A stretch of DNA of 64,000 nt, taken from assembly GCF_036588685.1 (NCBI RefSeq), contig NC_086380.1:1488001-1552000 (forward strand). The letters are read 5' to 3'. The notes under the pieces were generated by a model. It made no database searches. It was given only the letters and a program-made list of their open reading frames with translations, and was not told the DNA's origin. The translations under genes were made by a program, and so were the position numbers. This stretch comes from Mytilus trossulus (lineage: Eukaryota). Below are positions 8,266-62,898 of this stretch, piece after piece (position 1 is the first letter of the stretch; every line of letters begins with the position of its first letter).

Positions 8266-8896
8266 ATATATATGGAAGTGTTTAACGACCTTGACTGGCT
8301 TTTCAGCCCTCGCACGGTCGGCTCGGTGCCGCGAAGACGATTTGTGAGCATTTAAATATTTTGTGCCGTGGGTCAGGAACGGGTAGCAAAGGACGCCGAA
8401 TGGAGGCCGCCATCTTGGTTTTGGTGAGCTGATTTTACTTTTTGACTATTTTTGTTGTTTTCTTTACTTCACAACGGCTGCTTTCAGGGCCAGTTTGGTC
8501 AGCTTGGCAGCCCGCTAGCCTCGATGATGGAGTACTGGTAGATGAATCGTGGACGTAGTTCTAAGATGACAGGAAGCGTTATCAGGACCAAAGCCCTGAG
8601 GCAGTGAAATGTAGGTCGTATCACCCAACAGCCTAGGATACAGCCCTCGGACGTTAATCGGCATGACACTCCCCATAATAGACAATGGTTTTGGAGGCAT
8701 GTTAACGCGGGTACGCCAACTACTACGTCTCTCTGTACGGCATGGATTGGTTTCTGTCATCTTAGTAGTATGTCGTTGACCATCTAGCAATAAACCCTCA
8801 TCGAAGATAGGGGGTAAAGGAGAGCTGACCCAGCACGTTCGTTCAGCTGTAAGGACTGAGACGTGACTGAATGAATGAATGATGAATGAATGAATG
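8266..8896 (+). mobile_element. 631-bp non-autonomous non-LTR retroposon inserted in the third LTR
   Basis: 11-bp TSD GACAAAGTTTC at 8255-8265 and 8897-8907; the empty site is visible in the other two LTRs. (GAAT)n 3' tail, GC-richer than the flanks, no recognisable Pol III A/B boxes. Confidence 0.85.
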
Positions 8897-9665
8897 GACA
8901 AAGTTTCTCTGTCTTGAGCTGCCTTATATACTACGATATGGAACGGTCCATTATACAAGAAGGGGTGAAAATCAAGACTATACCAAAATTAGGGGTGTTT
9001 TAAGTAATAGATGGTGCTCCAACTATGGAGAAACTTGTATACATATAGAAACACAATTAACAGGGAAAGACAACTGGAGTTTCACATCAAAATAAATATA
9101 CTATGACCGATTTTCGTTACACTTATACACATGTATTGAGCCATTTCATTGCTTAAAGTACAGTAGAAATATATATACATACTAGGAGTTGGTCAGTTTT
9201 CACTGTTACTCTTAAATGATGCCCCGATGAGAAAACCAAATAGTTCTGAATCATTTGAATTATTGATCTGAAACGCTATAAAGCTTAATATGTTAGGGAT
9301 TTTTTAAAACATAAATCAACTTGTATGATGCCCGTTTGAATAGGTTTTTTTTCAAAAGATACAAAACCTTAAAACTTTCAACTCAAGATACTGTTATCTC
9401 GTGGTAATGATCCAATTCTTTCTTTTTTTTTAAATATGACTTTAGATTATTAAATTTATTTTGCAATTGAAAATGATTTGATATATTTCGTGCCTTAGCT
9501 TCTATAAATAGGTAACAATATCATCATCAAAGCTGTACAGGCATCTTGTTTTAAAATGAATTTTCTTTTTTTGAGAAATTTTTATTTAGTTATTCAATTT
9601 TTCACCACTTACAACTGTCATGACTGTCTGCCTCTGGTTTTATTTTATACATTAACTTTTAAGTA

Positions 9666-10446: not shown

Positions 10447-10573
10447 TATCTGTATTTTTTCATGACATTTTGCTTTGTTTCGTTCTGCTTTTATTTTGTT
10501 TCAGACAAAGTTTACAGGTACCCCTTTTTTCGTCCTTTTTTTATTTTTTAAAAAGCAACCCATGGGTTAAAAG

Positions 10574-10760
10574 TTCAAATATTATTATTCAAAACTGAGG
10601 TTTATCCAATTCAAATATTATTATTCAAAACTGAGGTTTATCAAATTCAAATATTATTATTCAAAACTGAGGTTTATCAAATTCAAATATTATTATTCAA
10701 AACTGAGGTTTATCAAATTCAAATATTATTATTCAAAACTGAGGTTTATCAAATTCAAAT
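10574..10760. repeat. 36-bp minisatellite, about 5 copies
   Basis: TTCAAATATTATTATTCAAAACTGAGGTTTATCAAA repeated contiguously with no spacers. Confidence 0.95.
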
Positions 10761-10977
10761 GTTAACCTTACTATTAAACCCCTTTTTGGTTTTATGAAAC
10801 AAAGACTAATTAACCAGGGTTTAAACTTTTCAGGAACAACATGCAAATATTTCAGCATTTCCAAAATTAACATTTTTCCAGAGTGTTTGACAAAATGAGT
10901 GAACAGGCAAGTTATGTAGTTGATGAGTTGATGCTTTAACATTTTTAAGAAATAGATCAAATCGATCAGATGGATCA

Positions 10978-41800: not shown

Positions 41801-42458
41801 CCCTCCACCTCAACTGCCAATTAAAATCTTATACCCTCCTCCCAAAATACAACCCAAAAACTTAAATCCTGTCCTCCTTATACCCATTTTAAAACCTTAA
41901 ACCCTCCACCTCACTTCATGCACTTGCACATCAAAAACTAAAACCCTCCAACTCACTTGCACATCAAAAACTTAAACCCTCCAACTCACTTGCACATCAA
42001 AATCTTAAACCCTCTTCCCAACATACAACCCAAACATGCCAAAAACTTAAACTCTGTCCTCCTTATACCCATTTGAAAACCTAAAACCCTCCACCTCATT
42101 TGCACATCAAAATCATATACTCTCCTCCCTACATACACCACAAATACTATCCCTACTGTTTCCCTAAGTTATGGCTGTTTTAGATAATTTTAACATTTTT
42201 AATATATATATGCACATGTATGCATGGTGTAATATATGTTAACTGCAAAGCATAGGGGCAATAACACTGTAAACTTTCTGATGCAATATCAGACACAATG
42301 CAGTTATATAATCAAATAACATGTACACAGTACATGTATAAGTACAAGATTTAAATAAACAAAACAAAATACACACAAACACATACATACACAAACATAA
42401 GATACTCAATAAAGTATTTACCTCCTGTATCTCCTTTAAGAAAACTTGTCCTGGTCAT
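32812..42458 (-). CDS. WSB1: WD repeat and SOCS box-containing protein 1, about 428 aa; exons 42458-42422, 40588-40408, 39784-39525, 38230-37998, 37422-37250, 36920-36807, 36132-36019, 32986-32812
   Basis: In-frame GT-AG joins (1287 nt total). Motifs AWSPDNTYFAW..GKVELVPW, several WD40 repeats and HMYPPPRPIFAAGAN. C-terminal SOCS box VARLQHLSRMVVRKHV...LRLPCRIKEYLKY. Confidence 0.93.
41490..42140. repeat. C-rich, about 33-bp minisatellite in a WSB1 intron
   Basis: Unit AAAAACTTAAACCCTCCAACTCACTTGCACATC with degenerate copies and a higher-order repeat. Confidence 0.9.
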
Positions 42459-45400
42459 TTTTTAAATTTCTCAACAAATGTACTCTTTACATGTAACTTT
42501 TTATAAACAATAACAACCTAATTCAGATAAAACACATATGACCTTGACACTGATCAGACAGAACCCACATGACATCGTTTGACTTTTATAAGTACTAAGA
42601 TAATACCAGTTTTATCAATGAAGTAGGTATTATTTTTATTAATGAACAATCCTTTACGGTTTTCTTGTTAGTAAACATACATACAGTTTTGACAGTTGTC
42701 CATCCCATGGCCATAACAATAAAATTAGATTTATATTTTTGGATATAAAAAAAGATGTGGTATGATTGCCATTGAGACAACTCTCCACAAGAGACCAAAA
42801 TGACACAGAAATTTACAAGTATAATACACTGTACTGCCTTCAACAATAAGCAAAGCATACCACATTATGAGTCAGCTATAAAAGGCACTGATATGACAAT
42901 TCAAACAAGAAAACTAACAATGTTTCTAAGAAGTTTGATGGTAGTGATTGAATGTCTGTAGAAATAGACACTACATGTAGGTATAGTAGATTTGCCAGCA
43001 CGAAGATCAAGAAAATGATGTATACAATTCTGCATAATTATTCTAAAAGTCTAAAAATATATCTAGATATAGGAAGATGTGGTATGAGTACCAATGAGAC
43101 AACTCTCCATCCAAGTAACAATTTATAATAGTAAACAATTATAGGTCAAGGTACAGCCTTCAACACAGAGCTTTGGCTAACAACCAACAGCAACTATAAA
43201 AGGGTCCTAATATATATTTAAAGAACACGTCAAATATCATATTTATTTTCCTTATGATAACTGATTATGAAAATATATCTTACTTCATCCCTCCCTGTCT
43301 ATGAATGTTGGCCAACTGACAATTCGATTACTCCAGGTCTTTACACTGAGTAAGTTTGAAAATAGTAGGTAGACTGATATCTTAGTTTTATTTGACAATC
43401 ATAGGTAAAGTTACTGATACATGTACATATAAGTTAGTTTGACAATACTATGTAAACTTACTAATATCATCAGAATCTATACACTGGAACCCAGAAGGTC
43501 TTGAAGAGGTGGTTCTCATTTATTAAGTTCTACTGTTTTATCCAATGATCTGAAATCATACAATGTTCAAATTTGTAAAAAAGTACTTCTAAGATGTACT
43601 GTACATATTAAATGTCATGAAAAAAATGCTTCTTACATTGAATGTACATGATGTATATATTACTTAGGCCATGGGAAAATAATTGATGGTTTCCCCTAAC
43701 CCGACCGGGTCATTCTTTAACCATGTTAACCGCCGGGTCATTAAATTTTTCTGTGAAATATTGGTCTTTGAAACTTGGAGTTTTTGCTGAAGACAGTTAC
43801 AAAAGGCGCAAATATTTTAAAGCTTTGAATGGCATGAATAGTCAAAATATATAATGTATACATACAAGTTGGGAATACTACATGTATCTTTATTCTGTCC
43901 CTATCATGAACATGATGAATGATGATTATTAAACTGTTGCTATTTTAAATCATATATATATATAATAATTAACTGTCATCATGGTCATGACTGTATATAT
44001 ATTACCACTCTCAAAATAAACAAAAGATACACATAGTATCCTGTTTCAAGATATATTTATATGTACATATTATTTATAATTATCATATATTTAGTAGTTG
44101 TTTGTGTAACACAATCAATGGGAATCTGCTGTTATAAAAATTATGAGCTACAAAAAGTAACCTGAGAAAAATTGTTAGACATGTCAAACATTTTTTGTCA
44201 AAACTTGAAAATTTTAGGGAATGTAAAAAAACCTTACATGCACTTATACCATGTATACAAGTAATTTTCAATAAAAATTAAGAGAAGATTAATCATTGTT
44301 AATCAAACATAATGTAAACAAAACAAAATTTACTAATTTATTTACGTCACATGTACTTAACATATATATTGTAATTTACTTTTATTATAGCTTGCTATTC
44401 AGCATGAGCCAAGGCACTGTGTTGAAGGTCATACTTAGACCTATAATGGTTTACTTATTACAAATTGTGACTTGAATGGAGAGTTGTCTCATTGGCATTC
44501 TTGCCACTATCTTCTTATATCTACATTTATTTGCAACTGTGACTGATATCCAGAGGCGGACTTGCCTCCTCTTTTTTTACTGTGAAAAAATTATTTGATT
44601 ATATAGGGAATCACTGGAGCATGACTGAATCAGTCCCACTCTCATCTGCTCTTAGGTAGTACTAGTCAGTGGTCCCCACATACATGTATGAAAATGTCTG
44701 GTTTCACCACTTTTAAAGGGTTCCAACTGAATGTCCCCATTCAAATGCATTGATCATCCAAAAAAGCAATCCGGATTCCCGCTCCCCACCCCATCCCACC
44801 TTGTATCTGCCACTACACATTTATTGGTATGTGTTAATCAAAATAATTACCCTTCGATGTCTAGCCTAAGTTTAATATTATACTACTAAAAAAAGAGTAA
44901 AGATTTTTCAAAGATAATTGAACAAATAGTGTCGAGTATTGAACATGTTGAACAAAATAGAAAGTACATAATTATATATTTTTTGGAAAACTGGAAATAG
45001 AATTAAAATTATAAAACACTTAAAAACATATATAAAGTAGTGTTCAAAGATTTAATTAATTGAAATGTCAGATTTCGTTTTTATCAAGTTCTGTTTACAT
45101 GTGCAATGATGTGTGAATAATAAAAATATTATGTAGGTCATCACCTCAGTGTCCTGAGAACTGTTGCCGGTTAAAGTTTGTGTTTATTTTTAAAAGATTT
45201 TAGAAATTTCATGGAACCAAGAATATGTATGTATTTTGAATGTCAAGGCTGTTATTCTCCTGATATTACAATTTCCGTCTGAAAATTCCCAGATTCTGAC
45301 AAAATATATTTTCATTTTAAATGTAAATAATTGAAATGAAAGACTTGTGACTTGAAAGTTTAATATCACATTATGACATTACTTGCAATTCGTTTGTTGT

Positions 45401-45720
45401 TTAGTGTCTACAGATTTTTAACTATGTTTTATCGACATAAATAAACAAACACATCTAACATGATAACCTGATATCTTACCAGCAATGTTTTTCTGTTTGT
45501 AGGTAAATGACCGAATTTTTGATTGATACTAAAGTGTTGATTTACTCATTGACACGTGACTAACTTATTGTGCGCTTCAAATAGGTGATTTTTAATGGTT
45601 AACAATCACCGATTTCAGCCGGAAAATTAGCGGTGGTTACCTGAGCGTTTTTTTTATCAGTTAGACGCTTGTAACTAATGTAAATGTATGGCGGTCTCTA
45701 ACGTTCTGACGTAAAACAAG

Positions 45721-48288
45721 ATGCCAACAAGATGTTGTGTCCCAGGATGTTCTGTGAGTGGTGGTCACAAATTCCCTTCAAATCCTGAGCTGTGTCTAAA
45801 GTGGAGGGTTGCCCTAAAAAGATCTGACCCCACCAAAGGTCTATGGAAACCGGGAAAGCACGACATTGTTTGTCATCAACATTTTACAGTAAATGATTAC
45901 AAGGAGACATTATTAGGTAAATTTTGTATGATCTACAGGTAGTTTATTTGCATTCTATTACTCTTAAAATTATCGGCATGCATTATAATGTCAGTAGTTG
46001 GATTTTTAGTGACCAGAAAGTGTTTTAGGGGGTGGAAGGTATACAATTTTTTTTTTTTTTTTTTTTTGTAAAACTAGCAGCATAAATGTATTGATGTATT
46101 AAAATAGCTTTGTATTGATATCAAAAGTTACATCAACTGTCCAAGCCTGTGTTTTACCTTTTCTATCACTATAATGTGTAATTTTTTTTATGAATAGTAT
46201 TTCTTAACACCTGTAAATTAATGTTCAAAGATCATGTATTTGGGCACAATCATTATCACAGCTGACTGACATATTGTTTCTGAATAAAAATATTGTTTTA
46301 GCATGAATTTTTGTGTTTTAAAGTTCGTGTTGCTTTGTGGTTTTGTTTTCCTTTTTTAGGAAGACTGTGCAAGTAAAGAGAATGTGAGTACAGCATTATT
46401 TAATGATAGAATAATATCCTTATCTTTTTAATAATAATATGATCATACATGTACTGTAACAATCAATGGAAAATTGGGATTAAAATAATTTCAGATAAAT
46501 AAAAAATAAATTAACTGTCAACTCCATAAATTGATGTTAATGAGACTTGAGAGTTACAAATGTATGTAAAAAATGTAAGTGGCTCATAATTTAAAATGAG
46601 CTGTTTGTTATCAATGAGTTGTTTTATTACATGAAAGTATCCACTTCAGGTTTCATAAGGCACAAATTGAAATGATTTAAACCTAAGAAATTGCCAACCA
46701 ACTCTACATTGAATACATAAATTATAAAAATAAGCAATTATGCATGATAGTCAAATTACAGCTTCAGCTTTGAGCCTTGACTCACACAACAAAGTTACTT
46801 AATTTGTAAATACATGTACCACCAATTATAGGTCACACCTGCAACATGGAGACTTGGTTTTTGCCATAGATAAACTTACTCAATGTCAGAGTGTGATTGG
46901 ATGTGGAACAAAGATTTCTTGTTTAACCCAATTAAATAAAATCTTAATAAGTCTTATTATTTATAAATGTATGTAAAGTAATACATGTATAGTGCTATCC
47001 CCACTGCAATATAAACAAAAATAATGCAGAATACATGTACAATGTACATGTAGATGGTAGTTATATTGCCAAAATAAAAAAAAAATGGTTTCCAAGCACA
47101 TGTGTGCAATATTTTTAAAATCAGTTTCATGCTTTGTTTCCAGGTGATCGAAGTAGACTAAAGGTAGATGCAGTACCATCAGTGTTTAGCTTTCGTCCCA
47201 AAATAAATATTGTAAGCCCTAGAGCTTTAAGAATGCAATCTAGAAAAGCCATGAGTGTGGACACAGCTCTTAACCAAGGAGTACAACAAGAGGTTGAAAT
47301 TGAGTCAACATCAAATAGTACTGATATTTCCTTACCTTCAGAGCCTGACGTACATGTACCCAAGGACATGCAGATCCAATGCGAGTTACTTGGTCGGTAT
47401 TCGATTGAGAGGTTTATGGACAATCCAAAGGCAGTTTCATTTTATACAGGTTTTAAATCTTATGAACATTTTATGTTCTTATTCCATGCACTAGGTCCTG
47501 CTGCATATGAGCTCAAATATAAATGTTCAACCCTTCATCCATCGGATCAGCTTTTTATAACATTGATTAAACTTAGATGTGCCAAAGAAGATGTAGAGTT
47601 ATCCTTGCTATTTGATTTATCTGTTTCAACCATTGCTAGGATTTTTAATACCTGGATTAACTTCCTTTATTTTCAATTGAATGAATTAAATATTTGGCCA
47701 TCAAGAGACATTGTTGATAAGCATATGCCAGTAGATTTTCATAGAAAATTTCCAAGGACGAGAGTTATTCTTGATGCTACCGAGATTCCTATCCAGAAAT
47801 CTCAAGACGTTAACATTCAGAGTGTGACTTGGTCATCCTACAAGCACAAAAATACTGTGAAAACTATGGTCGGGTGTACCCCAAGAGGTGCTATATCCTA
47901 TATTTCAGACTGCTATGGGGGATCTACCAGTGACAGGCAGATTATTGAAGACTCAAGTCTTTTAGATAATACCAGGTTTGAATCTGGGGATAGTATAATG
48001 GCGGATCGAGGCATAATGGTTCAAGACCTCTTTGCAAACAACGATGTGTATGTTAATACGCCTACAATGCTGAAAGGAAAATCACAACTAGAGCCAGAAG
48101 AAATTGTGAGGGATAGACGTGTTGCATCCAAGCGTATCCATATAGAACGTGTTATAGGATTAGCCAAACGTTTTAAAATTCTTAAGTCCGAACTTCCAAA
48201 CACCAAACTGTCATTAAGTAACAGAATTGTATTTGTTTGTTTTGCATTGACAAATTTCAAAAATGCAATTGTTGATAAATTTGCCTAG
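45721..48288 (+). CDS. THAP-HTH-DDE transposase, 446 aa (exons 45721-45916, 47144-48288)
   Basis: THAP domain CCVPGC..HKFP..W..VCHQHF..LKVDAVPSVF is split by the intron. HTH region DQLFITLIKLR..LSVSTIARIF. Catalytic motifs VILDATE, MADRG and RIHIERVIG. Confidence 0.93.
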
Positions 48289-48659
48289 ATTTTCAAAGGG
48301 TCCCATTTTTATATTTATATTGTAATTTAACCAAAGATAGTAAAATTGGCCTTATTTTCATAGTTCTAAAGTATACTCCTGAGATGTATCCACTAATTAC
48401 AAAAAATGTAATTATACTTTTTAACTAATTTTGGCGTGTGATAAATACATGTATGACATTTTCGGTACCTAATGCTCTTATTTCTTTGAGTATGTTTAAT
48501 TATTTTTTTATCAAGTTCAGCATTATTGGAGGAAAAGAGGGGGGATGTCATGAATTGAGAATTATCCATAAAAAGAGGGGGGGGGCTTCAATTGATTATA
48601 AATCAGAAGGGAGATAACAAATTAAACAATATAAAGTCTCAATAATTTTATTAATTTTT

Positions 48660-49662
48660 TTATAGTATTGAGGCAATATATGGCCTAAAGTGTTTGGAGT
48701 AAAACAATTCCATCTTTGGCAGCAGACAACCAACACAGTAGTCATGATTAATTCCAATTTTCTCAACAAAGAGGTCTTTGAATGTGTACACAATAAAATA
48801 ACAATGTTCTCTATTTGATAAAAATAGTTGACCCTGAATTTGGTCATAATAGTTTGATGATTTTTTTAATGTTATATTGTTATCTTTGTCATATTCCAAG
48901 AAAGAAAAATTAACACCTGGAACAATGCTCTCATCTCGTCCTGTATATGGACACTTCACCTCCACAACACAATCATCTCCAATTAAAGCGTCAGGGGAAG
49001 CTCCAAGAAATGGTTTGTCAGCAGATATAAACAGTCCACATGGTTGACATTTCATTTGAAACTTTTTTTCAAACTGTGTTATTGCCTTCTGCTCATACAT
49101 TTTACCATGCAATACAGACTTCACCTTTAAGAACTTTTGGGAACACAATGATTCACATAATTTTTGTATATTTCTCCTTGTGGTAATTTTTGAAATTTCT
49201 CCAAATCTAGATGCTGTAATCCTCCACTGTCTTAAATAAAACCATTTCTTATTGCTGGATTGTCCTCTTGACTCCTTTTCAGCCAATTTTGCCTGCTGTT
49301 CTGTAACCTAAAATAGTAGTGAAATCAGTATAAAATCTTGACGTTAAGAAATTTCCAACCTGTAAATGAAGAAAGCAGTTTTTTTTAATTTTTATATAGT
49401 TAAAAGATCTTAAAAGATTTCTAATATAGTTTATAAGATATATCTCATATAGTTTATAAGATATATCTCATATAGTTCATAAGATATCTCATAAAAATAA
49501 TATATGAGATATATCTTATAAACTATATTAAGATATTATAAACTACATAAGATATCCTATAAACTATGTAATATATCTTTAATATACACTATATAAGATA
49601 TATTAGACATTATATAAGATATCTTATAAACTATGTATATGATATCTCATATAGTTTATAAG

Positions 49663-49694
<32 letters not shown>

Positions 49695-52600
49695 CATGTA
49701 AGATAAGATTTATAAGATAACATAATTGATTATTTTTTATATATAAAGATAATTTATATAGTTTATAGGATATTTCATGAATTCAAGCAATCCTTTTTAT
49801 TTTATTCAGAAATAGAAACATTTATCCAATCATAAGATGTTTTTTTTATTGAAATACAAGTATTTTGGACCTAGGTACTGAATACACAGTCAAACATGTT
49901 TATAAAAGTGTGGAAACTATTCTGTTTTGAAAATTAAGTGAATAAAAACTGAATTATTTAGAGTACAACAATGATCAGTAAATTTTATGGTTAGTGGTAC
50001 CCTATATGCTATATGAAAGCTGAATATTTCTTATTTAGTGCTTATGAATTGTTAAACTTTAGCGTAAAAATATTTAAGGGTTTTTATAGATTAATATTTA
50101 TTGTACATGACCAGATATTTTGGAGTTTCCTTGTATTGGCAATGATTTACATATAAATTGATGAATCTTTCATCTTACCAGTAAAGCTCTATCGACCCAA
50201 TATTCAGCAAATGGTAATGGCAGGTAGGCATGATCAAGCTGGGCAGTCTGAAATACAAATTCAAAACTATATTAAAGAAGCCATGTGCATATAAAATCAA
50301 ACTACAATGCACATGATTTGAATTATTTTTTAAACATGGAGTTATCTACCTTTGACTAACAAAATTTATATCGATATACTACATACATTGTATTACAGTC
50401 AATTTGACAATATGAAAACTCAAGGCTACTTGCTTTCTTTACTTGATATATAGTTTTTTGGATTATTTAATACCAGTTACTTGAATTTACAAGAACAGTG
50501 TCATGTTTAAAAATAGAAAGGCAAGGTAAATTTTCCAAAAATCAAGAACATGCAAACTTTTTGTCTTTATTATGTGTATGATTCAAATAGGTTTATTAAT
50601 ATATATGACTATGTGAGTGTATAAGTTGTTAATGTTGTTTATTGTTAATTTTATTCTTTGTATTACCTTAAATTTGTTAATTCTATTTAAAATTAAAATA
50701 TTTTTCAAGTTTTTCTTGTTAACCATCAACTTCCATTGTACCTGTATATCAGCTGCAGGAAAAATATATCTCAGTGTAAGGTCTTGAGAAGATTGAGAGC
50801 AGAAGTTAATCATGGTGTTTCTGACATGGTCTGTAAACCCTTCCATATTTCTGTATTTCTGTGGTCTTGGGTCTTCTAATATTTCAGTTGGTTTTCTTTT
50901 AGCCAATTTTTCAATTTTCACTGGAGCACCTAAAATATTAAATAATTAAAAATGAACGAAAACAAGAGACAAAAACTCTAGTCAGAGGCATGGCGGAGAT
51001 ATTTTTTCTGAACCTTGACATGTTTCCATATATATGTTTAACTTTTTAGAACAATAATGACGTAAAACTTCTTGTACTGTTGATTTACGGTGGGACATAA
51101 GATATAAAGAAATGAAACTTGTTTATTCTCTCAATTCTTTGGTTATATAAATGGCTTTTACAGACAGTCAGTTAAAAGAAGTTACCATTGTAATATGTCT
51201 TTGGTTGTTGAAAAGTTTGTAGACCTTCTGTACATGACTTCTGTATTGAAATTTCTCCAGTATTAGAAAAAACATCAGCCATTAACAGCACTGCAGCTAC
51301 ATGCTTGCAGGTGGCGTTGGGACCCTTTCCTGCTGGACATTCACACTTAGAATTAACTGGGCTGCCAGATTTGTCAAGTTTGATGTGATAGTTGTAAGTT
51401 ACCTGCAAATAAAAAAAATAAGTGAAGCTTAATTTTAAAAACAAATCAGATGATTTTATTTGAGCATATATTGGTTTGGCAGAGCATTCACTCAATAAAA
51501 GTAAACTGAAAGAGATACAATAATGGTTATTGAAAAAGTATTACAGAGTATAATCATGAAAATTGGAAAACATGAAGCAGAAATCAATAACACTTATTTC
51601 ATCTTAGACATGGTTTGAGTTAAGCCTTTTTCATCTGATTTTTATGGTTCGTTCTTATGTTGTACTGTTATACCACTGTTTCAGGTTAGGGGAGGGATGG
51701 GATCCTGCCAAAATTTTTAACCTAACCACATTTTTTATGTATATGCCTGACCCAAGTCTGTAATTCAGTGGTTGTCGTTTGTTTTTCAATCATTTTTTTA
51801 TATAAACAAGGCTGACAGTTTTCTCATTTGAATTGTTTTACATTGTCTTATGGGATACTTTAATTACTTTTATAGCTGACTATGCAGTATGGGCTTTGCT
51901 CATTGTTGAAGGATGTACGGTGACCTATAGTTGTTGATGTCTGTGTAATTTTGGTCTTTTGTGGATAGTTGTCTCATTGGAAATCATACCACATCTTCTT
52001 TTTTTTGTATTATTTTCTCAAATAGAATATTCCACATTTAAGTTATAACACACGTTATATAAATGTTATAAGGATGGGACAAAACTGTTAATGATGCAAA
52101 CCTGTTTTTTCATGGCTGCCCCAACAATACCACTTAGGAAAATACCATCAACAAGGATAAGTACAGAACAAGCTAAGATTTTTTTCGCTTGTAGCAAATC
52201 TCTGCCTTTCTCCAATGCCTTTATGTCGCCATTCACCTGCTTATCACCTGTAAAAATAACAACATATATAAATAATATATAAATGATTTTAGGATTTTTA
52301 AATGAACATTTACTGGTGACAATTACAGAATTGTTTTAATATGGACGCCACTTTATTTTCAAAATGGTATTTTATATAGTTCGACTAAATCAAAATCTAT
52401 CATTATGTACCTTGTTTAAACACTTTTAATTTATTTACATTATGAGACATGATTGGCAAATGCAATATGTTTGTTTGGTAACTTTCACTTTAAAATACTT
52501 TACCACCATGGAGATACTAACCTGCTAATCTAAATAAAAAATAGCCATCAATTTGCTCTCTGGTTACTTTAGAAAATACCAATCTGTGATCTGCTATAAG

Positions 52601-53437
52601 CTGCTTATATCCATGTTTTGGCCATTCTATGTCTGTAGCTTCTGGAATTTCTATGAGGGGTGGTTTGAAGTTGTGATTTCTGTCATATGCAACCAGTCTA
52701 TAAGCATAATTATTAGTGTGTGAATTCAAAATTAAAACAATTTATTTCTATGTAATAATTAGGACATTTAAAATTTTTTTTTTTTATTTGGTTAAACTTT
52801 TGTTGCGAAGAATTTTAAAATATTTTATTATATTGATACTGTATCATACAGTATAAAAACAAGGATTTTTTTGCATGTTATTGTTTTGTTTATAAGTTTC
52901 ACAGGCCCTTGATTCTTTCACTTTCTATCCATGTTATTTAATAATATAAGAACATGGAAAGTAGACCTTCCAACTGATAGAAATAAGTGCATGTGATAAG
53001 ATTGTTCTATATTTCAACTTAATCAAATTGTTAAAAAAAGTACCCCTTTTAAGACCAAAAAAAAAGAAAAACGATTGACAAAATATCAATTCCAATTAAA
53101 CAAAATTATACTTCAGACATTTCCGCTTCTTTTGGTGCCAAGTTCATCAAAATCTAACATGGAATACCAAAAAAATATACTTTATATGAAATGTATACAA
53201 CAACTAAAAATTGACTATTACGTTTGTAAGTTATGACGTTTTTTCCACATACTCACTGTACTGTGGCAGACTTTAAAGTCGTTAGTATCCCATAAAATAT
53301 TGTGCAATTGACATGATTTAAGTCATCATATACCTATCAATCAGATCTGCCTTTCTGCCTGTGATTACTGCACCCTTAATACTCAGTTCTGCCTTCAATT
53401 TCGGGACGGTCCACAGAGGGTATTTTGCCGCCGCCAT
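48660..53437 (-). CDS. SAP-SWIM-YqaJ (lambda-exonuclease-like) protein, 515 aa; exons 53437-53334, 52697-52522, 52247-52102, 51402-51186, 50929-50742, 50247-50179, 49307-48660
   Basis: Seven exons join in frame (1548 nt). SAP motif WTVPKLKAELSIKGAVITGRKADLIDRL; SWIM motif CECPAGKGPNATCKH; YqaJ motifs RITASRFG, HGKMYE, GASPD, EVKCP and YYDQIQGQL. Confidence 0.9.
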
Positions 53438-53669
53438 AGTTTACATTAGATACAAGCGTCTCATTGAAAATAAAACGCACGCGTAACCACCGCTAACGTT
53501 TATGCGGATCCGACTTGTAAAATTACGTGATTGTTAACCAATTTTGGTTAACAATCACCGATTTCAGCCGGAAAATTAGCGGTGGTTACCTGAGCGTTTT
53601 TTTTATCAGTTAGACGCTTGTAACTAATGTAAATGTATGGCGGTCTCTAACGTTCTGACGTAAAACAAG

Positions 53670-56237
53670 ATGCCAACAAGATGTTGTGTCCCAGGATGTT
53701 CTGTGAGTGGTGGTCACAAATTCCCTTCAAATCCTGAGCTGTGTCTAAAGTGGAGGGTTGCCCTAAAAAGATCTGACCCCACCAAAGGTCTATGGAAACC
53801 GGGAAAGCACGACATTGTTTGTCATCAACATTTTACAGTAAATGATTACAAGGAGACATTATTAGGTAAATTTTGTATGATCTACAGGTAGTTTATTTGC
53901 ATTCTATTACTCTTAAAATTATCGGCATGCATTATAATGTCAGTAGTTGGATTTTTAGTGACCAGAAAGTGTTTTAGGGGGTGGAAGGTATACAAATTTT
54001 TTTTTTTTTTTTTTTTGTAAAACTAGCAGCATAAATGTATTGATGTATTAAAATAGCTTTGTATTGATATCAAAAGTTACATCAACTGTCCAAGCCTGTG
54101 TTTTACCTTTTCTATCACTATAATGTGTAATTTTTTTTATGAATAGTATTTCTTAACACCTGTAAATTAATGTTCAAAGATCATGTATTTGGGCACAATC
54201 ATTATCACAGCTGACTGACATATTGTTTCTGAATAAAAATATTGTTTTAGCATGAATTTTTGTGTTTTAAAGTTCGTGTTGCTTTGTGGTTTTGTTTTCC
54301 TTTTTTAGGAAGACTGTGCAAGTAAAGAGAATGTGAGTACAGCATTATTTAATGATAGAATAATATCCTTATCTTTTTAATAATAATATGATCATACATG
54401 TACTGTAACAATCAATGGAAAATTGGGATTAAAATAATTTCAGATAAATAAAAAATAAATTAACTGTCAACTCCATAAATTGATGTTAATGAGACTTGAG
54501 AGTTACAAATGTATGTAAAAAATGTAAGTGGCTCATAATTTAAAATGAGCTGTTTGTTATCAATGAGTTGTTTTATTACATGAAAGTATCCACTTCAGGT
54601 TTCATAAGGCACAAATTGAAATGATTTAAACCTAAGAAATTGCCAACCAACTCTACATTGAATACATAAATTATAAAAATAAGCAATTATGCATGATAGT
54701 CAAATTACAGCTTCAGCTTTGAGCCTTGACTCACACAACAAAGTTACTTAATTTGTAAATACATGTACCACCAATTATAGGTCACACCTGCAACATGGAG
54801 ACTTGGTTTTTGCCATAGATAAACTTACTCAATGTCAGAGTGTGATTGGATGTGGAACAAAGATTTCTTGTTTAACCCAATTAAATAAAATCTTAATAAG
54901 TCTTATTATTTATAAATGTATGTAAAGTAATACATGTATAGTGCTATCCCCACTGCAATATAAACAAAAATAATGCAGAATACATGTACAATGTACATGT
55001 AGATGGTAGTTATATTGCCAAAATAAAAAAAAAATGGTTTCCAAGCACATGTGTGCAATATTTTTAAAATCAGTTTCATGCTTTGTTTCCAGGTGATCGA
55101 AGTAGACTAAAGGTAGATGCAGTACCATCAGTGTTTAGCTTTCGTCCCAAAATAAATATTGTAAGCCCTAGAGCTTTAAGAATGCAATCTAGAAAAGCCA
55201 TGAGTGTGGACACAGCTCTTAACCAAGGAGTACAACAAGAGGTTGAAATTGAGTCAACATCAAATAGTACTGATATTTCCTTACCTTCAGAGCCTGACGT
55301 ACATGTACCCAAGGACATGCAGATCCAATGCGAGTTACTTGGTCGGTATTCGATTGAGAGGTTTATGGACAATCCAAAGGCAGTTTCATTTTATACAGGT
55401 TTTAAATCTTATGAACATTTTATGTTCTTATTCCATGCACTAGGTCCTGCTGCATATGAGCTCAAATATAAATGTTCAACCCTTCATCCATCGGATCAGC
55501 TTTTTATAACATTGATTAAACTTAGATGTGCCAAAGAAGATGTAGAGTTATCCTTGCTATTTGATTTATCTGTTTCAACCATTGCTAGGATTTTTAATAC
55601 CTGGATTAACTTCCTTTATTTTCAATTGAATGAATTAAATATTTGGCCATCAAGAGACATTGTTGATAAGCATATGCCAGTAGATTTTCATAGAAAATTT
55701 CCAAGGACGAGAGTTATTCTTGATGCTACCGAGATTCCTATCCAGAAATCTCAAGACGTTAACATTCAGAGTGTGACTTGGTCATCCTACAAGCACAAAA
55801 ATACTGTGAAAACTATGGTCGGGTGTACCCCAAGAGGTGCTATATCCTATATTTCAGACTGCTATGGGGGATCTACCAGTGACAGGCAGATTATTGAAGA
55901 CTCAAGTCTTTTAGATAATACCAGGTTTGAATCTGGGGATAGTATAATGGCGGATCGAGGCATAATGGTTCAAGACCTCTTTGCAAACAACGATGTGTAT
56001 GTTAATACGCCTACAATGCTGAAAGGAAAATCACAACTAGAGCCAGAAGAAATTGTGAGGGATAGACGTGTTGCATCCAAGCGTATCCATATAGAACGTG
56101 TTATAGGATTAGCCAAACGTTTTAAAATTCTTAAGTCCGAACTTCCAAACACCAAACTGTCATTAAGTAACAGAATTGTATTTGTTTGTTTTGCATTGAC
56201 AAATTTCAAAAATGCAATTGTTGATAAATTTGCCTAG
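53670..56237 (+). CDS. THAP-HTH-DDE transposase, copy 2 (exons 53670-53865, 55093-56237)
   Basis: ORF-track translation is identical to copy 1. Confidence 0.93.
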
Positions 56238-56608
56238 ATTTTCAAAGGGTCCCATTTTTATATTTATATTGTAATTTAACCAAAGATAGTAAAATTGGCC
56301 TTATTTTCATAGTTCTAAAGTATACTCCTGAGATGTATCCACTAATTACAAAAAATGTAATTATACTTTTTAACTAATTTTGGCGTGTGATAAATACATG
56401 TATGACATTTTCGGTACCTAATGCTCTTATTTCTTTGAGTATGTTTAATTATTTTTTTATCAAGTTCAGCATTATTGGAGGAAAAGAGGGGGGATGTCAT
56501 GAATTGAGAATTATCCATAAAAAGAGGGGGGGGGCTTCAATTGATTATAAATCAGAAGGGAGATAACAAATTAAACAATATAAAGTCTCAATAATTTTAT
56601 TAATTTTT

Positions 56609-57611
56609 TTATAGTATTGAGGCAATATATGGCCTAAAGTGTTTGGAGTAAAACAATTCCATCTTTGGCAGCAGACAACCAACACAGTAGTCATGATTAA
56701 TTCCAATTTTCTCAACAAAGAGGTCTTTGAATGTGTACACAATAAAATAACAATGTTCTCTATTTGATAAAAATAGTTGACCCTGAATTTGGTCATAATA
56801 GTTTGATGATTTTTTTAATGTTATATTGTTATCTTTGTCATATTCCAAGAAAGAAAAATTAACACCTGGAACAATGCTCTCATCTCGTCCTGTATATGGA
56901 CACTTCACCTCCACAACACAATCATCTCCAATTAAAGCGTCAGGGGAAGCTCCAAGAAATGGTTTGTCAGCAGATATAAACAGTCCACATGGTTGACATT
57001 TCATTTGAAACTTTTTTTCAAACTGTGTTATTGCCTTCTGCTCATACATTTTACCATGCAATACAGACTTCACCTTTAAGAACTTTTGGGAACACAATGA
57101 TTCACATAATTTTTGTATATTTCTCCTTGTGGTAATTTTTGAAATTTCTCCAAATCTAGATGCTGTAATCCTCCACTGTCTTAAATAAAACCATTTCTTA
57201 TTGCTGGATTGTCCTCTTGACTCCTTTTCAGCCAATTTTGCCTGCTGTTCTGTAACCTAAAATAGTAGTGAAATCAGTATAAAATCTTGACGTTAAGAAA
57301 TTTCCAACCTGTAAATGAAGAAAGCAGTTTTTTTTAATTTTTATATAGTTAAAAGATCTTAAAAGATTTCTAATATAGTTTATAAGATATATCTCATATA
57401 GTTTATAAGATATATCTCATATAGTTCATAAGATATCTCATAAAAATAATATATGAGATATATCTTATAAACTATATTAAGATATTATAAACTACATAAG
57501 ATATCCTATAAACTATGTAATATATCTTTAATATACACTATATAAGATATATTAGACATTATATAAGATATCTTATAAACTATGTATATGATATCTCATA
57601 TAGTTTATAAG

Positions 57612-57643
<32 letters not shown>

Positions 57644-60600
57644 CATGTAAGATAAGATTTATAAGATAACATAATTGATTATTTTTTATATATAAAGATA
57701 ATTTATATAGTTTATAGGATATTTCATGAATTCAAGCAATCCTTTTTATTTTATTCAGAAATAGAAACATTTATCCAATCATAAGATGTTTTTTTTATTG
57801 AAATACAAGTATTTTGGACCTAGGTACTGAATACACAGTCAAACATGTTTATAAAAGTGTGGAAACTATTCTGTTTTGAAAATTAAGTGAATAAAAACTG
57901 AATTATTTAGAGTACAACAATGATCAGTAAATTTTATGGTTAGTGGTACCCTATATGCTATATGAAAGCTGAATATTTCTTATTTAGTGCTTATGAATTG
58001 TTAAACTTTAGCGTAAAAATATTTAAGGGTTTTTATAGATTAATATTTATTGTACATGACCAGATATTTTGGAGTTTCCTTGTATTGGCAATGATTTACA
58101 TATAAATTGATGAATCTTTCATCTTACCAGTAAAGCTCTATCGACCCAATATTCAGCAAATGGTAATGGCAGGTAGGCATGATCAAGCTGGGCAGTCTGA
58201 AATACAAATTCAAAACTATATTAAAGAAGCCATGTGCATATAAAATCAAACTACAATGCACATGATTTGAATTATTTTTTAAACATGGAGTTATCTACCT
58301 TTGACTAACAAAATTTATATCGATATACTACATACATTGTATTACAGTCAATTTGACAATATGAAAACTCAAGGCTACTTGCTTTCTTTACTTGATATAT
58401 AGTTTTTTGGATTATTTAATACCAGTTACTTGAATTTACAAGAACAGTGTCATGTTTAAAAATAGAAAGGCAAGGTAAATTTTCCAAAAATCAAGAACAT
58501 GCAAACTTTTTGTCTTTATTATGTGTATGATTCAAATAGGTTTATTAATATATATGACTATGTGAGTGTATAAGTTGTTAATGTTGTTTATTGTTAATTT
58601 TATTCTTTGTATTACCTTAAATTTGTTAATTCTATTTAAAATTAAAATATTTTTCAAGTTTTTCTTGTTAACCATCAACTTCCATTGTACCTGTATATCA
58701 GCTGCAGGAAAAATATATCTCAGTGTAAGGTCTTGAGAAGATTGAGAGCAGAAGTTAATCATGGTGTTTCTGACATGGTCTGTAAACCCTTCCATATTTC
58801 TGTATTTCTGTGGTCTTGGGTCTTCTAATATTTCAGTTGGTTTTCTTTTAGCCAATTTTTCAATTTTCACTGGAGCACCTAAAATATTAAATAATTAAAA
58901 ATGAACGAAAACAAGAGACAAAAACTCTAGTCAGAGGCATGGCGGAGATATTTTTTCTGAACCTTGACATGTTTCCATATATATGTTTAACTTTTTAGAA
59001 CAATAATGACGTAAAACTTCTTGTACTGTTGATTTACGGTGGGACATAAGATATAAAGAAATGAAACTTGTTTATTCTCTCAATTCTTTGGTTATATAAA
59101 TGGCTTTTACAGACAGTCAGTTAAAAGAAGTTACCATTGTAATATGTCTTTGGTTGTTGAAAAGTTTGTAGACCTTCTGTACATGACTTCTGTATTGAAA
59201 TTTCTCCAGTATTAGAAAAAACATCAGCCATTAACAGCACTGCAGCTACATGCTTGCAGGTGGCGTTGGGACCCTTTCCTGCTGGACATTCACACTTAGA
59301 ATTAACTGGGCTGCCAGATTTGTCAAGTTTGATGTGATAGTTGTAAGTTACCTGCAAATAAAAAAAATAAGTGAAGCTTAATTTTAAAAACAAATCAGAT
59401 GATTTTATTTGAGCATATATTGGTTTGGCAGAGCATTCACTCAATAAAAGTAAACTGAAAGAGATACAATAATGGTTATTGAAAAAGTATTACAGAGTAT
59501 AATCATGAAAATTGGAAAACATGAAGCAGAAATCAATAACACTTATTTCATCTTAGACATGGTTTGAGTTAAGCCTTTTTCATCTGATTTTTATGGTTCG
59601 TTCTTATGTTGTACTGTTATACCACTGTTTCAGGTTAGGGGAGGGATGGGATCCTGCCAAAATTTTTAACCTAACCACATTTTTTATGTATATGCCTGAC
59701 CCAAGTCTGTAATTCAGTGGTTGTCGTTTGTTTTTCAATCATTTTTTTATATAAACAAGGCTGACAGTTTTCTCATTTGAATTGTTTTACATTGTCTTAT
59801 GGGATACTTTAATTACTTTTATAGCTGACTATGCAGTATGGGCTTTGCTCATTGTTGAAGGATGTACGGTGACCTATAGTTGTTGATGTCTGTGTAATTT
59901 TGGTCTTTTGTGGATAGTTGTCTCATTGGAAATCATACCACATCTTCTTTTTTTTGTATTATTTTCTCAAATAGAATATTCCACATTTAAGTTATAACAC
60001 ACGTTATATAAATGTTATAAGGATGGGACAAAACTGTTAATGATGCAAACCTGTTTTTTCATGGCTGCCCCAACAATACCACTTAGGAAAATACCATCAA
60101 CAAGGATAAGTACAGAACAAGCTAAGATTTTTTTCGCTTGTAGCAAATCTCTGCCTTTCTCCAATGCCTTTATGTCGCCATTCACCTGCTTATCACCTGT
60201 AAAAATAACAACATATATAAATAATATATAAATGATTTTAGGATTTTTAAATGAACATTTACTGGTGACAATTACAGAATTGTTTTAATATGGACGCCAC
60301 TTTATTTTCAAAATGGTATTTTATATAGTTCGACTAAATCAAAATCTATCATTATGTACCTTGTTTAAACACTTTTAATTTATTTACATTATGAGACATG
60401 ATTGGCAAATGCAATATGTTTGTTTGGTAACTTTCACTTTAAAATACTTTACCACCATGGAGATACTAACCTGCTAATCTAAATAAAAAATAGCCATCAA
60501 TTTGCTCTCTGGTTACTTTAGAAAATACCAATCTGTGATCTGCTATAAGCTGCTTATATCCATGTTTTGGCCATTCTATGTCTGTAGCTTCTGGAATTTC

Positions 60601-61386
60601 TATGAGGGGTGGTTTGAAGTTGTGATTTCTGTCATATGCAACCAGTCTATAAGCATAATTATTAGTGTGTGAATTCAAAATTAAAACAATTTATTTCTAT
60701 GTAATAATTAGGACATTTAAAATTTTTTTTTTTTATTTGGTTAAACTTTTGTTGCGAAGAATTTTAAAATATTTTATTATATTGATACTGTATCATACAG
60801 TATAAAAACAAGGATTTTTTTGCATGTTATTGTTTTGTTTATAAGTTTCACAGGCCCTTGATTCTTTCACTTTCTATCCATGTTATTTAATAATATAAGA
60901 ACATGGAAAGTAGACCTTCCAACTGATAGAAATAAGTGCATGTGATAAGATTGTTCTATATTTCAACTTAATCAAATTGTTAAAAAAAGTACCCCTTTTA
61001 AGACCAAAAAAAAAGAAAAACGATTGACAAAATATCAATTCCAATTAAACAAAATTATACTTCAGACATTTCCGCTTCTTTTGGTGCCAAGTTCATCAAA
61101 ATCTAACATGGAATACCAAAAAAATATACTTTATATGAAATGTATACAACAACTAAAAATTGACTATTACGTTTGTAAGTTATGACGTTTTTCCCACATA
61201 CTCACTGTACTGTGGCAGACTTTAAAGTCGTTAGTATCCCATAAAATATTGTGCAATTGACATGATTTAAGTCATCATATACCTATCAATCAGATCTGCC
61301 TTTCTGCCTGTGATTACTGCACCCTTAATACTCAGTTCTGCCTTCAATTTCGGGACGGTCCACAGACGGTATTTTGCCGCCGCCAT
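56609..61386 (-). CDS. SAP-SWIM-YqaJ protein, copy 2 (exons offset +7949; residue 7 is Arg instead of Pro)
   Basis: Same exon structure as copy 1; codon 7 is CGT instead of CCT. Confidence 0.9.
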
Positions 61387-62898
61387 AGTTTACATTAGAT
61401 ACAAGCGTCTCATTGAAAATAAAACGCACGCGTAACCACCGCTAACGTTTATGCGGATCCGACTTGTAAAATTACGTGATTGTTAACCATTTAATCTACA
61501 CCATTTCTTCTGTGAATTTGTTTACTTACCCCAATCTGGAATACTGTGTGTTTATTGCTTATTTTATCAACGAAATCCACTAAATAATTGATCAAGAGAT
61601 GAACACACTACAGATCAAAACTTTGGCACGTACTGGTTTCCTGTTCATAGTCCCTTATCATCCTTATCTCATGATGCAACACATTCCACAGAGTAAACTT
61701 GGGGGTGTGTTCGTTGTGACCTTGAACGATATTCTCCATCGTGACACTTTTCGTGTTCTACTTTTTTGGGGGTATACTGGATATCACGTTTTCGTTTTTT
61801 TTCAACAATAAAATTAACGTTTCTATTCTTTATAAACTTTCTGATTAAATGTTTTACTTTGTTCCCACTAATCTTTATTTTAATTTATTTTTATGTAATA
61901 TGTTGTTGTTTGTTTTGTTTGGTTTTTTTTGGGTTTTTTTTTTTGGGGGGGGGGGTTCTAAGACCAGTACATGAGACTACTAAACTCCGTTTGACTTTTT
62001 TGTGTTGAAGTCAAAAGGAAAACATTCTTCTCGGCCAGACGGGATTTTAGGAAGAATCCACGAAACATTAGATTGCAAAAAGTGTTCCGAAGATTTCTGA
62101 ACACAAGAGCTCGCTGAAGACGGATCGTTCTCATTATAAAGTTAGAAAAAAATGTAGGATTGCAAATGAGATGACAACCCACATTGATATACCAGTACAG
62201 TGTTACAGTGTAATTTTGCATAAACATTCCTATTTGAACTTTTATAAAGAAAGGCTTTTATTTTATTTAATATTTGAATTTTTTCTTCAAAAGAAAATCA
62301 TTTTGTAGTTTTGTTACAATTAACTGCACAGTTAATTTATTCTTTGTTATATTAAGAAATTGTTAAGAACATATTAAGAATTCCTTTTTCCTTTGTCATA
62401 TCTTAAGTGACAGATTTTATTACATAAGATCGTCTCACACTTTTTTGTCCAAAATAGGTGTAAATTCTTTGCTAATCAAAATATCTTTGTATACAATATT
62501 TGCAATTAAGTTCCTACATCTCCAAGCAATTTAGTGGATAATCCTAATACGTGGTAACTTTAACTTTTGCCGTGTTACCATGGATTAATAAGAAGAATCG
62601 GATTCCGATTGCAGTAAATACAAACTATTCTCACTGAGTAATCAGATTTGGTTATTGTCAGGCCTGTCAAAAGACTTTTGCGAACAATTAAGTCTATCTT
62701 GCCACAGCTTTACTGATCATAAGTCAATTCCACACTTGTATCTTTCTGGCACGTACCCTCTTCTCAAGCTCTGCAAAATTCGTACACCCAAAAGTCAAGT
62801 TTGACACGACGAAAACAAATTTGAAACAGTTCAAATAAAATGACCATATATATATATATATGTAGAGTTGTCACTGACTCAGACGTACTTATAAATAT

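What the first reader, a model, noticed from the sequence alone, without database searches (positions are those of the whole stretch)
53527..53558. ISL2EU dimer joined end-to-end by a 6-bp non-TSD spacer: possible trace of a circular or concatemeric transposition intermediate
Seen: two complete 7943-bp copies in direct orientation, with a single AT duplication outside the pair (45595-45596 and 61489-61490). The junction reads GTGATTGTTAACC-AATTTT-GGTTAACAATCAC. Two independent adjacent insertions would leave a spacer that starts and ends in AT, and AATTTT does neither. The element has no long direct repeats to drive simple unequal crossover. Known: abutted-end junctions with short spacers mark circle or tandem-dimer intermediates of bacterial IS3/IS21/IS30, and lambda-type exonucleases act in strand-annealing recombination. 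Inference: the element may excise, join its ends and integrate as a multimer, which would give a role to the otherwise unexplained ISL2EU exonuclease. The spacer also resembles the empty target (AATTTA), so target-templated repair is an alternative. The junction is a 15-bp-arm palindrome able to form a cruciform.
Basis: partly seen in the sequence, partly recalled or inferred. Interest (0 to 1): 0.85.

Follow-up and report, generated by a model that had tools for sequence, protein, structure and literature searches.

The report
Head-to-tail ISL2EU transposon dimer in mussel
Two almost identical copies of a cut-and-paste transposon sit head to tail in a mussel chromosome, joined by six odd bases, which most likely records one misrepaired transposition event, not a regular circular or multimeric stage of the element's life cycle.

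Summary
Two 7943-bp copies (45597-53539 and 53546-61488) lie in direct orientation. They differ by 3 substitutions, are joined by AATTTT, and share one AT duplication outside the pair.

The element is a textbook ISL2EU: a THAP-HTH-DDE transposase plus a YqaJ/SWIM partner gene. The genome is almost certainly Mytilus trossulus.

- **Target rule:** all 17 outer ends of this family in the genome are flanked AAT|...|ATT (target A|AT|T). Both inner flanks of the junction break this rule.
- **One event:** the two copies share 21 private substitutions and 32 private gap columns against seven other copies. They are sisters from a single event, not two insertions.
- **Insertion confirmed:** a paralogous or allelic block about 96 kb downstream lacks the whole dimer.
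- **Uniqueness:** the TIR-spacer-TIR junction occurs once in the 1.3-Gb assembly. None of about 100 other PHIS (PIF/Harbinger-ISL2EU-Spy superfamily) transposase hits lies in a tandem pair.
- **Reads:** contigs from four public runs of other animals do not cross the junction. They also lack this lineage's private letters, so they do not test it.

Best reading: a rare by-product of transposase cleavage followed by end joining, either between sisters or via a circle plus recombination. A routine IS30-like circle or multimer pathway is unsupported. The scan had not reported this before on other DNA.

The parts
45595..45596 (.). Left copy of the AT target-site duplication; with the preceding A it forms the canonical AAT flank
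   Evidence: The paralogous empty site lacks everything from here to 61489.
45597..53539 (+). E1, complete 7943-bp ISL2EU element; 13-bp TIRs at 45597-45609 and 53527-53539
45721..45942 (+). THAP zinc-finger exon of the E1 transposase (same in E2 at 53670-53891)
   Evidence: Pfam PF05485, E = 6e-10.
47134..48288 (+). HTH_Tnp_4 + DDE_Tnp_4 catalytic exon of the E1 transposase, open frame (same in E2 at 55083-56237)
   Evidence: Pfam PF13359 E = 1e-41 and PF13613 E = 8e-11. Both copies have an open frame without stops and match the query at 100%. The annotated 446-aa protein P0001 is 100% identical.
48660..49286 (-). YqaJ (lambda-exonuclease-like) exon of the partner gene in E1 (E2: 56609-57235)
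   Evidence: Pfam PF09588, E = 5e-14.
51172..51495 (-). SWIM zinc-finger exon of the partner gene in E1 (E2: 59121-59444)
   Evidence: Pfam PF04434, E = 2e-5.
53527..53558 (.). End-to-end junction: right TIR of E1, spacer, left TIR of E2. Near-palindrome with 15-nt arms.
   Evidence: The only such junction in the assembly.
53540..53545 (.). Non-canonical 6-bp spacer AATTTT. The outer A and T match the nearest TSD base on each side; the inner ATTT has no counterpart in register.
53546..61488 (+). E2, complete 7943-bp ISL2EU element; 3 substitutions from E1
61489..61490 (.). Right copy of the AT target-site duplication; with the following T it forms the canonical ATT flank

Best explanation
This is a real chromosomal head-to-tail dimer of one canonical ISL2EU element, made in a single aberrant, transposase-dependent event.

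**Proposed steps.** A monomer was inserted normally at an AATT site, giving the one outer AT duplication (shown). Later the transposase cut at or within 1 nt of the element ends. Host end joining then connected a right end to a left end of a sister copy, with a few filler bases. Three routes fit equally well:
- (i) direct joining of the cut right end on one sister chromatid to the cut left end on the other;
- (ii) closure of an excised copy into a circle by end joining, followed by homologous recombination of that circle with the resident copy;
- (iii) gap repair in which both broken ends copied the whole element before being joined.

All three yield flank-E-spacer-E-flank with one outer duplication.

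**Status of the steps.** The dimer is a by-product, not a normal intermediate. The cleavage, the joining and the choice among routes are inferred. The structure, the single event and the non-canonical junction are shown.
For: - **Canonical ISL2EU.** THAP, HTH_Tnp_4 and DDE_Tnp_4 on the + strand; YqaJ and SWIM on the - strand. The literature gives target A|AT|T, TSD AT and a YqaJ second ORF (PMC4482050 and PMC4122938).
- **Target rule.** All 17 outer ends of the family are flanked AAT|...|ATT. The two inner ends read CC|AAT and TTT|GG.
- **Sister copies.** E1 and E2 differ by 3 substitutions and 0 indels. They share 21 substitutions and 32 gap columns absent from seven other copies. Each carries at least one derived private change.
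- **Breakpoints.** The duplicated unit ends within 1 nt of both TIRs, and 4 nt are unmatched. This is the signature of cleavage at the ends plus filler joining.
- **Insertion.** A collinear paralogous block lacks the whole 15.9-kb dimer at exactly this point.
- **Rarity.** The junction is unique in 1.3 Gb, and no other tandem pair occurs among 107 PHIS transposase hits.
- **Precedent.** End-joined transposon ends with 1-1000 bp of intercalary DNA of unknown origin are common excision by-products of hobo/Hermes and other eukaryotic cut-and-paste elements (PMC2803484).
Against: - No read-level confirmation. The four runs laid were Logan contigs of other animals. None of the listed pieces bridges 53540/53546, and all lack the E1/E2 private letters at 53263-4, 53307 and 53418.
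- Routes (i)-(iii) cannot be told apart from the sequence.
- The spacer cannot be derived cleanly from the flanks under any simple model.
- There is only one instance.
- A duplicated block nearby on the same scaffold shows the region is structurally complex, which slightly raises the chance of assembly trouble.
Confidence: 0.6

Rival explanations
1. The dimer arose elsewhere by the same kind of aberrant end joining. It then moved here as one 15.9-kb composite element using its two outer ends, which produced the single AT duplication.
For: There is a single canonical AAT/ATT duplication around the whole pair. No close relative of the E1/E2 lineage exists elsewhere in the genome, as expected for cut-and-paste loss of a donor. 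The paralogous site lacks both copies together.
Against: The same outer flanks are expected if a monomer inserted here and doubled in place. The E1/E2 lineage has about 21-24 private changes against only 1-2 per copy since the doubling. That fits a long-resident monomer just as well. Mobilisation of a 16-kb composite is likely to be less efficient than that of a monomer.
Confidence: 0.15
2. Assembly artefact. The animal has one copy here, and the second copy and junction come from a graph loop, for example from reads of an end-joined extrachromosomal circle of the same element, or from misjoined haplotypes.
For: No independent read support could be obtained. A large duplicated block about 96 kb away on the same scaffold shows the region is hard to assemble, or contains retained haplotypes.
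Against: Assemblers do not invent a novel TIR-AATTTT-TIR sequence, so some reads must contain it. There are no N or gaps in the window. The two copies carry different derived substitutions. Haplotype misjoins overlap in flanking sequence and do not fall precisely at the TIR ends.
Confidence: 0.12
3. One reading: ISL2EU normally or often excises, joins its ends into circles or concatemers, and integrates as a multimer in the manner of IS30/IS21/IS3, with the YqaJ exonuclease acting in that pathway.
For: An abutted-end junction exists, with both TIRs intact and a short spacer. The element encodes a lambda-exonuclease-like protein of unknown role. Reintegration of end-joined episomes is documented for Hermes (PMC2803484).
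Against: Only one junction occurs in 1.3 Gb, with none among the other eight full-length copies or about 100 other PHIS hits, and none in JGI metagenome contigs. The spacer is 6 bp rather than the 2-bp TSD length and is not flank-derived. Canonical cutting of a circle junction would give a monomer, not a dimer. Strand annealing by a lambda-type exonuclease would collapse direct repeats, not build them.
Confidence: 0.08
4. Transposase played no part in the junction. It came either from two canonical neighbouring insertions whose spacer later mutated, or from an ordinary tandem duplication that happens to end at the element.
For: The sequence around the site is A/T-only and of low complexity, so mutation or slippage could blur an original spacer.
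Against: No AATT target lies next to either end in the flanks. The shortest canonical spacer, ATTAAT, differs from AATTTT at 3 of 6 positions. The copies are sisters. Chance breakpoints within 1 nt of both TIR ends are negligible. Duplication through the TTTAAT microhomology predicts the spacer ATTTAAT.
Confidence: 0.05

Closest known systems
End-joined episomal circles of eukaryotic cut-and-paste transposons (hobo/Hermes; also reported for Ac/Ds, Tc1, Minos, Mu), PMC2803484
   Same: Both TIRs are intact and face each other. They are separated by a few bases of intercalary DNA whose origin is not obvious. These circles are interpreted as by-products of excision plus host end joining.
   Different: Here the junction is embedded in a chromosome between two full copies, not shown to be extrachromosomal. 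The superfamily is PHIS/ISL2EU, for which I found no such report in the ISL2EU papers I read. Only one spacer is seen, not a spectrum.
Tandem IS dimers and circle junctions of bacterial IS30, IS21 and IS3/IS911 (from my own knowledge of these families)
   Same: Abutted left and right ends separated by a short spacer; head-to-tail geometry.
   Different: In those families the spacer has a fixed short length tied to the target duplication and comes from donor flank. The junction is a highly reactive obligatory intermediate and recurs. Here the spacer is 6 bp against a 2-bp TSD and is not flank-derived. It is unique in the genome and has persisted long enough for 3 substitutions to accumulate between the copies.
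Closely linked Ac/fAc pairs in direct orientation in maize: reversed-ends and sister-chromatid alternative transposition, and transposition-mediated re-replication (PMC3744419, PMC4270019)
   Same: Two copies in direct orientation whose facing ends are a right and a left end. Transposase acts on ends of different copies or sisters, and host repair then creates duplications.
   Different: The maize events insert the hybrid ends at a new target with a normal duplication and duplicate flanking host DNA. Here the ends are joined to each other and no host DNA beyond 6 bp is involved.
V(D)J signal joints (as discussed in PMC2803484)
   Same: Two recombination-signal or TIR-like ends fused head to head after excision by a DDE-type recombinase and host end joining.
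   Different: Signal joints are usually precise and lie on excised circles. The enzyme family is different (RAG/Transib).

Membership tests
ISL2EU group of the PHIS (PIF/Harbinger-ISL2EU-Spy) superfamily | Transposase with an N-terminal THAP finger, an HTH and a DDE_Tnp_4-type catalytic domain | tested here: met
   PF05485 E = 6e-10; PF13613 E = 8e-11; PF13359 E = 1e-41. The definition comes from PMC4482050 and PMC4122938.
ISL2EU group of the PHIS (PIF/Harbinger-ISL2EU-Spy) superfamily | [quoted passage not shown] | tested here: met
   PF09588 E = 5e-14 on the opposite strand, with a SWIM finger exon upstream.
ISL2EU group of the PHIS (PIF/Harbinger-ISL2EU-Spy) superfamily | 2-bp AT target-site duplication within the target A|AT|T | tested here: met
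   17 of 17 outer ends of this family are flanked AAT|...|ATT. The paralogous site without the element keeps a single copy length.
Circle or tandem-dimer junction of copy-out-paste-in or IS30/IS21-type insertion sequences | Spacer of fixed length matching the target duplication and derived from donor flank | tested here: not met
   The spacer is 6 bp against a 2-bp TSD. It starts AA and ends TT, whereas every flank in the family starts ATT or ends AAT.
Circle or tandem-dimer junction of copy-out-paste-in or IS30/IS21-type insertion sequences | The junction recurs as an intermediate (several instances or molecules) | tested here: inconclusive
   It is unique in the assembly and absent from JGI metagenome contigs. 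Contigs of four other runs show none. Raw reads of the source animal were not available.
Circle or tandem-dimer junction of copy-out-paste-in or IS30/IS21-type insertion sequences | The junction is preferentially cleaved and integrated by the transposase | not testable with these tools
   Needs a biochemical or cell-based assay.
End-joined episomes of eukaryotic cut-and-paste transposons | Two intact TIRs facing each other with short intercalary DNA of non-obvious origin | tested here: met
   Compare PMC2803484.
End-joined episomes of eukaryotic cut-and-paste transposons | Extrachromosomal circular topology and a spectrum of spacers | not testable with these tools
   The assembled form is chromosomal. 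The test needs exonuclease-resistant DNA, or the raw long reads.
Alternative-transposition substrate (paired ends of two linked copies, Ac/Ds type) | Two copies in direct orientation with a right end facing a left end at short distance | tested here: met
   Whether rearrangements result was not tested.

The most novel reading that the evidence does not exclude
ISL2EU elements do form end-joined circles or tandem multimers as a functional, reintegrating form. On this reading the chromosomal dimer is a trapped example, and the element's lambda-exonuclease-like YqaJ/SWIM protein takes part in making or resolving such forms. That would be an IS30/IS21-like pathway in a eukaryotic PHIS transposon.
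Probability: 0.07. Interest if true: 0.85.

Novelty: new variant of a known kind. Interest (0 to 1): 0.37.

Why it matters
If the dimer is real, it is a rare chromosomal record of transposon ends being joined to each other in the PHIS superfamily, whose cleavage chemistry is largely uncharacterised.

- **A hint on cleavage.** One flank base is retained at each end. This hints at where the non-transferred strand is cut, but it is a hint only.
- **A ready-made substrate.** The locus carries abutted reversed ends 6 bp apart, on which to test whether ISL2EU transposase can act on such a junction and whether the YqaJ partner influences the outcome.
- **A possible source of instability.** It is a 16-kb direct repeat with a 32-bp palindrome. 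An earlier scan note places it upstream of a host gene; I did not check that.

It does not by itself change the view that ISL2EU is a plain cut-and-paste element.

Tried and rejected
- **Two independent canonical insertions.** Rejected on the flank rule and on the sister relationship of the copies.
- **Simple tandem duplication with flank-derived junction.** The spacer would have to be a prefix of ATTTAATC followed by a suffix of GATTTTTAAT. AATTTT fits only as A + 4 unmatched + T.
- **Duplication through the TTTAAT microhomology (45591-45596 and 61490-61495).** This predicts the spacer ATTTAAT. Rejected.
- **One-ended strand transfer as in IS911.** This predicts a spacer equal to a flank prefix (ATT...) or suffix (...AAT). 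Rejected.
- **Palindromic nucleotides from hairpin opening.** These would add GG or AT, not AA. Rejected.
- **Snap-back templating from AAAATT.** The reverse complement of the spacer lies 15 nt inside the right end and 26 nt inside the left end, but the priming bases do not fit. Such a hexamer is also expected by chance in 32% GC DNA.
- **Spacer templated from the empty target.** It matches the inferred target AATTTA at 5 of 6 and the paralog ATTTTC at 4 of 6. Neither is significant for an A/T-only hexamer.
- **A second hit of the relaxed junction pattern (C8:51127344).** It sits inside a larger palindrome and has no similarity to this element.
- **Public reads.** Only Logan contigs of other animals or species were served. 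They carry the family but not this lineage, so they neither support nor refute the junction.
- **Another assembly of the same element.** The only 100%-identical transposase cluster belongs to this same genome.

Full report
**What is there.** The window holds two 7943-bp copies of one element in direct orientation: E1 at 45597-53539 and E2 at 53546-61488. They differ by three substitutions and no indels. Each ends in a perfect 13-bp terminal inverted repeat (TIR), GGTTAACAATCAC. The copies are joined by AATTTT (53540-53545). AT stands immediately outside the pair on both sides (45595-45596 and 61489-61490). The junction is a near-palindrome with 15-nt arms. As single-stranded DNA it folds into a 14-bp stem with a 4-nt loop at -13.4 kcal/mol, and none of 200 shuffles folds as well. 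There are no N in the window.

**What the element is.** On the + strand it carries a THAP exon (45721-45942) and a 384-codon open frame with HTH_Tnp_4 and DDE_Tnp_4 domains (47134-48288). On the - strand it carries a YqaJ exonuclease exon (48660-49286) and a SWIM finger exon (51172-51495). This matches the published definition of the ISL2EU group of the PHIS (PIF/Harbinger-ISL2EU-Spy) superfamily. That definition is a THAP-HTH-DDE transposase, a second ORF with a YqaJ domain, target A|AT|T and a 2-bp AT duplication (PMC4482050 and PMC4122938).

The best protein match is a 446-aa protein annotated in Mytilus trossulus. Its longest contig has exactly the length of contig C5 of this genome, 88,129,055 bases. 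The window therefore almost certainly comes from the M. trossulus reference assembly.

**The family in this genome.** Pattern searches found seven other full-length copies, one diverged partial copy and one copy lacking both ends. All 17 outer ends are flanked AAT| on the left and |ATT on the right. The target rule is therefore as strict here as in the literature.

The two inner ends of the dimer break the rule. E1 is followed by AAT... and E2 is preceded by ...TTT. A spacer made by two neighbouring canonical insertions would have to start ATT and end AAT. The flanks also contain no AATT site next to either end.

**One event, not two.**
- E1 and E2 differ at 3 positions.
- Each differs from every other copy by at least 47 substitutions and at least 60 gap positions.
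- They share 21 substitutions and 32 gap columns found in none of the seven other copies.
- Each carries at least one derived private change: G at offset 7822 in E1 and C at offset 7648 in E2.
- The E1/E2 lineage has about as many private changes (24) as other copies have (7-29).

So the doubling falls in roughly the last 5-8% of that lineage's history. The dimer is young relative to the family, but not brand new.

**Where the breakpoints are.** The 7949-bp periodicity extends only one base beyond each TIR: T before each copy and A after. These are the nearest bases of the canonical duplication. The four bases ATTT (53541-53544) have no counterpart in register. Breakpoints within 1 nt of both transposon ends cannot be chance, so the junction is tied to the transposon ends. 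The four unmatched bases look like filler from end joining.

I tested simple derivations and none gives AATTTT:
- flank prefix plus flank suffix;
- duplication through the TTTAAT microhomology that lies on both sides, which predicts ATTTAAT;
- one-ended strand transfer as in IS911;
- hairpin-derived palindromic bases;
- snap-back copying of the subterminal AAAATT.

The resemblance to the inferred empty target (AATTTA, 5 of 6) is not significant for an A/T-only hexamer.

**An empty site.** The left flank occurs a second time at C8:1639623. Window 16176-62850 is collinear with C8:1600023-1640975 at 86-99.5% identity. This is either a segmental duplication or a retained second haplotype about 96 kb downstream. 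That copy lacks the whole 15.9-kb dimer at exactly this point, which confirms the outer boundaries.

One detail is unexplained. Within 200 bp on either side the two copies differ at only three positions. Two of those lie inside the six bases at the insertion point (AATTTA inferred here, ATTTTC there, same length). The paralog site may be an excision footprint. Alternatively, a T-to-A change created the AATT target in this lineage and the other difference is chance.

**How common is the junction.**
- The pattern right TIR, 0-30 bases, left TIR occurs once in the 1.3-Gb assembly.
- A relaxed 10+10 pattern adds one hit inside a larger palindrome that shows no similarity to this element.
- Among 107 scored PHIS transposase matches in the genome, the only tandem pair is this one.
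- JGI metagenome contigs contain none.

**Reads.** Public runs that hold the stretch were all served as Logan contigs, with at most 74% of the sampled words. I laid four runs from different organisms or samples on 51540-55545, which is 4,006 letters and within the operators' limit.
- Among the listed pieces, those over the right end of the element stop at 53540, the end of the element plus the shared A. None of the listed pieces bridges to 53546.
- All four runs carry C at 53418 and different letters at 53263-4 and 53307. These contigs therefore represent other copies of the family, not the E1/E2 lineage.
- The listing was also truncated.

The reads neither support nor refute the junction.

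**Interpretation.** Shown: a canonical ISL2EU, a single outer duplication, sister copies from one event, a junction that violates the integration rule, breakpoints at the element ends, and uniqueness in the assembly.

Inferred: transposase cut the ends, and host end joining linked a right end to a left end of a sister copy. This could happen directly between sister chromatids. It could also happen by circularisation of an excised copy followed by homologous recombination with the resident copy, or by double copying during gap repair. All three routes give the observed layout, and the sequence cannot separate them.

End-joined transposon ends with intercalary DNA of unknown origin are well-documented by-products of eukaryotic cut-and-paste excision (PMC2803484). 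Paired ends of linked or sister copies are known to be used by Ac transposase (PMC3744419, PMC4270019).

Three things count against it here: the spacer has the wrong length and origin, the junction does not recur, and cutting a circle junction would give a monomer. A lambda-type exonuclease acting in strand annealing would be expected to collapse such a direct repeat, not build it.

**Residual doubt.** I could not see the source animal's long reads, so an assembly artefact remains possible. One version is a graph loop caused by reads from an end-joined episome. I put the artefact reading at about 12%. An assembler cannot invent the junction sequence, there are no gaps, and the copies carry different derived changes.

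**Verdict.** This is a genuine and neatly documented oddity. It is most likely a one-off misrepair product of an otherwise ordinary ISL2EU element. It is of moderate interest, mainly as a natural reversed-ends substrate and as a pointer for read-level and PCR tests.

Noticed in passing
window 16176-62850 versus G000:C8:1600023-1640975 (loci L036-L041): A block of about 45 kb is present twice on the same scaffold, about 96 kb apart. It is collinear, with mosaic identity from 86% to 99.5%. It is either a segmental duplication or a retained second haplotype. The second copy lacks the transposon dimer.
   Followed up: partly
window 45591-45596 and 61489-61495 versus L035:1520-1535: The paralogous empty site reads ATTTTC where the occupied site implies AATTTA. 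That is two differences within 6 nt, while the surrounding 400 nt show one. It may be an excision footprint, or a mutation that created the AATT target.
   Followed up: partly
window 51540-52075 (and 59489-60024 in E2): A segment inside the element is a very high-copy repeat in all four public runs, with summed contig depth of 10^5-10^6 against tens elsewhere. Related copies lie at window 37650, 39330, 42747-42856 and 44465. It is probably a small high-copy repeat nested in or captured by the element.
   Followed up: no
L031 (G000:C14:7957000-7966900), positions 2412-8386: A further copy of the element covers only element positions 459-6453, so both ends are missing. Its transposase frame is 100% identical and open. 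The 3' break lies at the edge of the high-copy repeat.
   Followed up: partly
L032 (G000:C1:96523753) and L033 (G000:C6:85122883): Two loci carry the same 13-bp TIR with the canonical AAT flank but unrelated internal sequence. They may be ends of non-autonomous or sister families that use the same transposase.
   Followed up: partly
window 45623-45629 and 53512-53518: AAAATTA lies on the same strand in both subterminal regions: 26 nt inside the left end and 15 nt inside the right end. Its core is the reverse complement of the spacer. It may be chance or a subterminal binding motif.
   Followed up: no
window 3158-9166, 10535-10800, 24311-25303, 41266-42148: Several tandem-repeat arrays lie in the window: about 2.07-kb units repeated 3 times, a 36-bp array, 160/260-bp units and a 33-bp array. 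They are unrelated to the finding.
   Followed up: no
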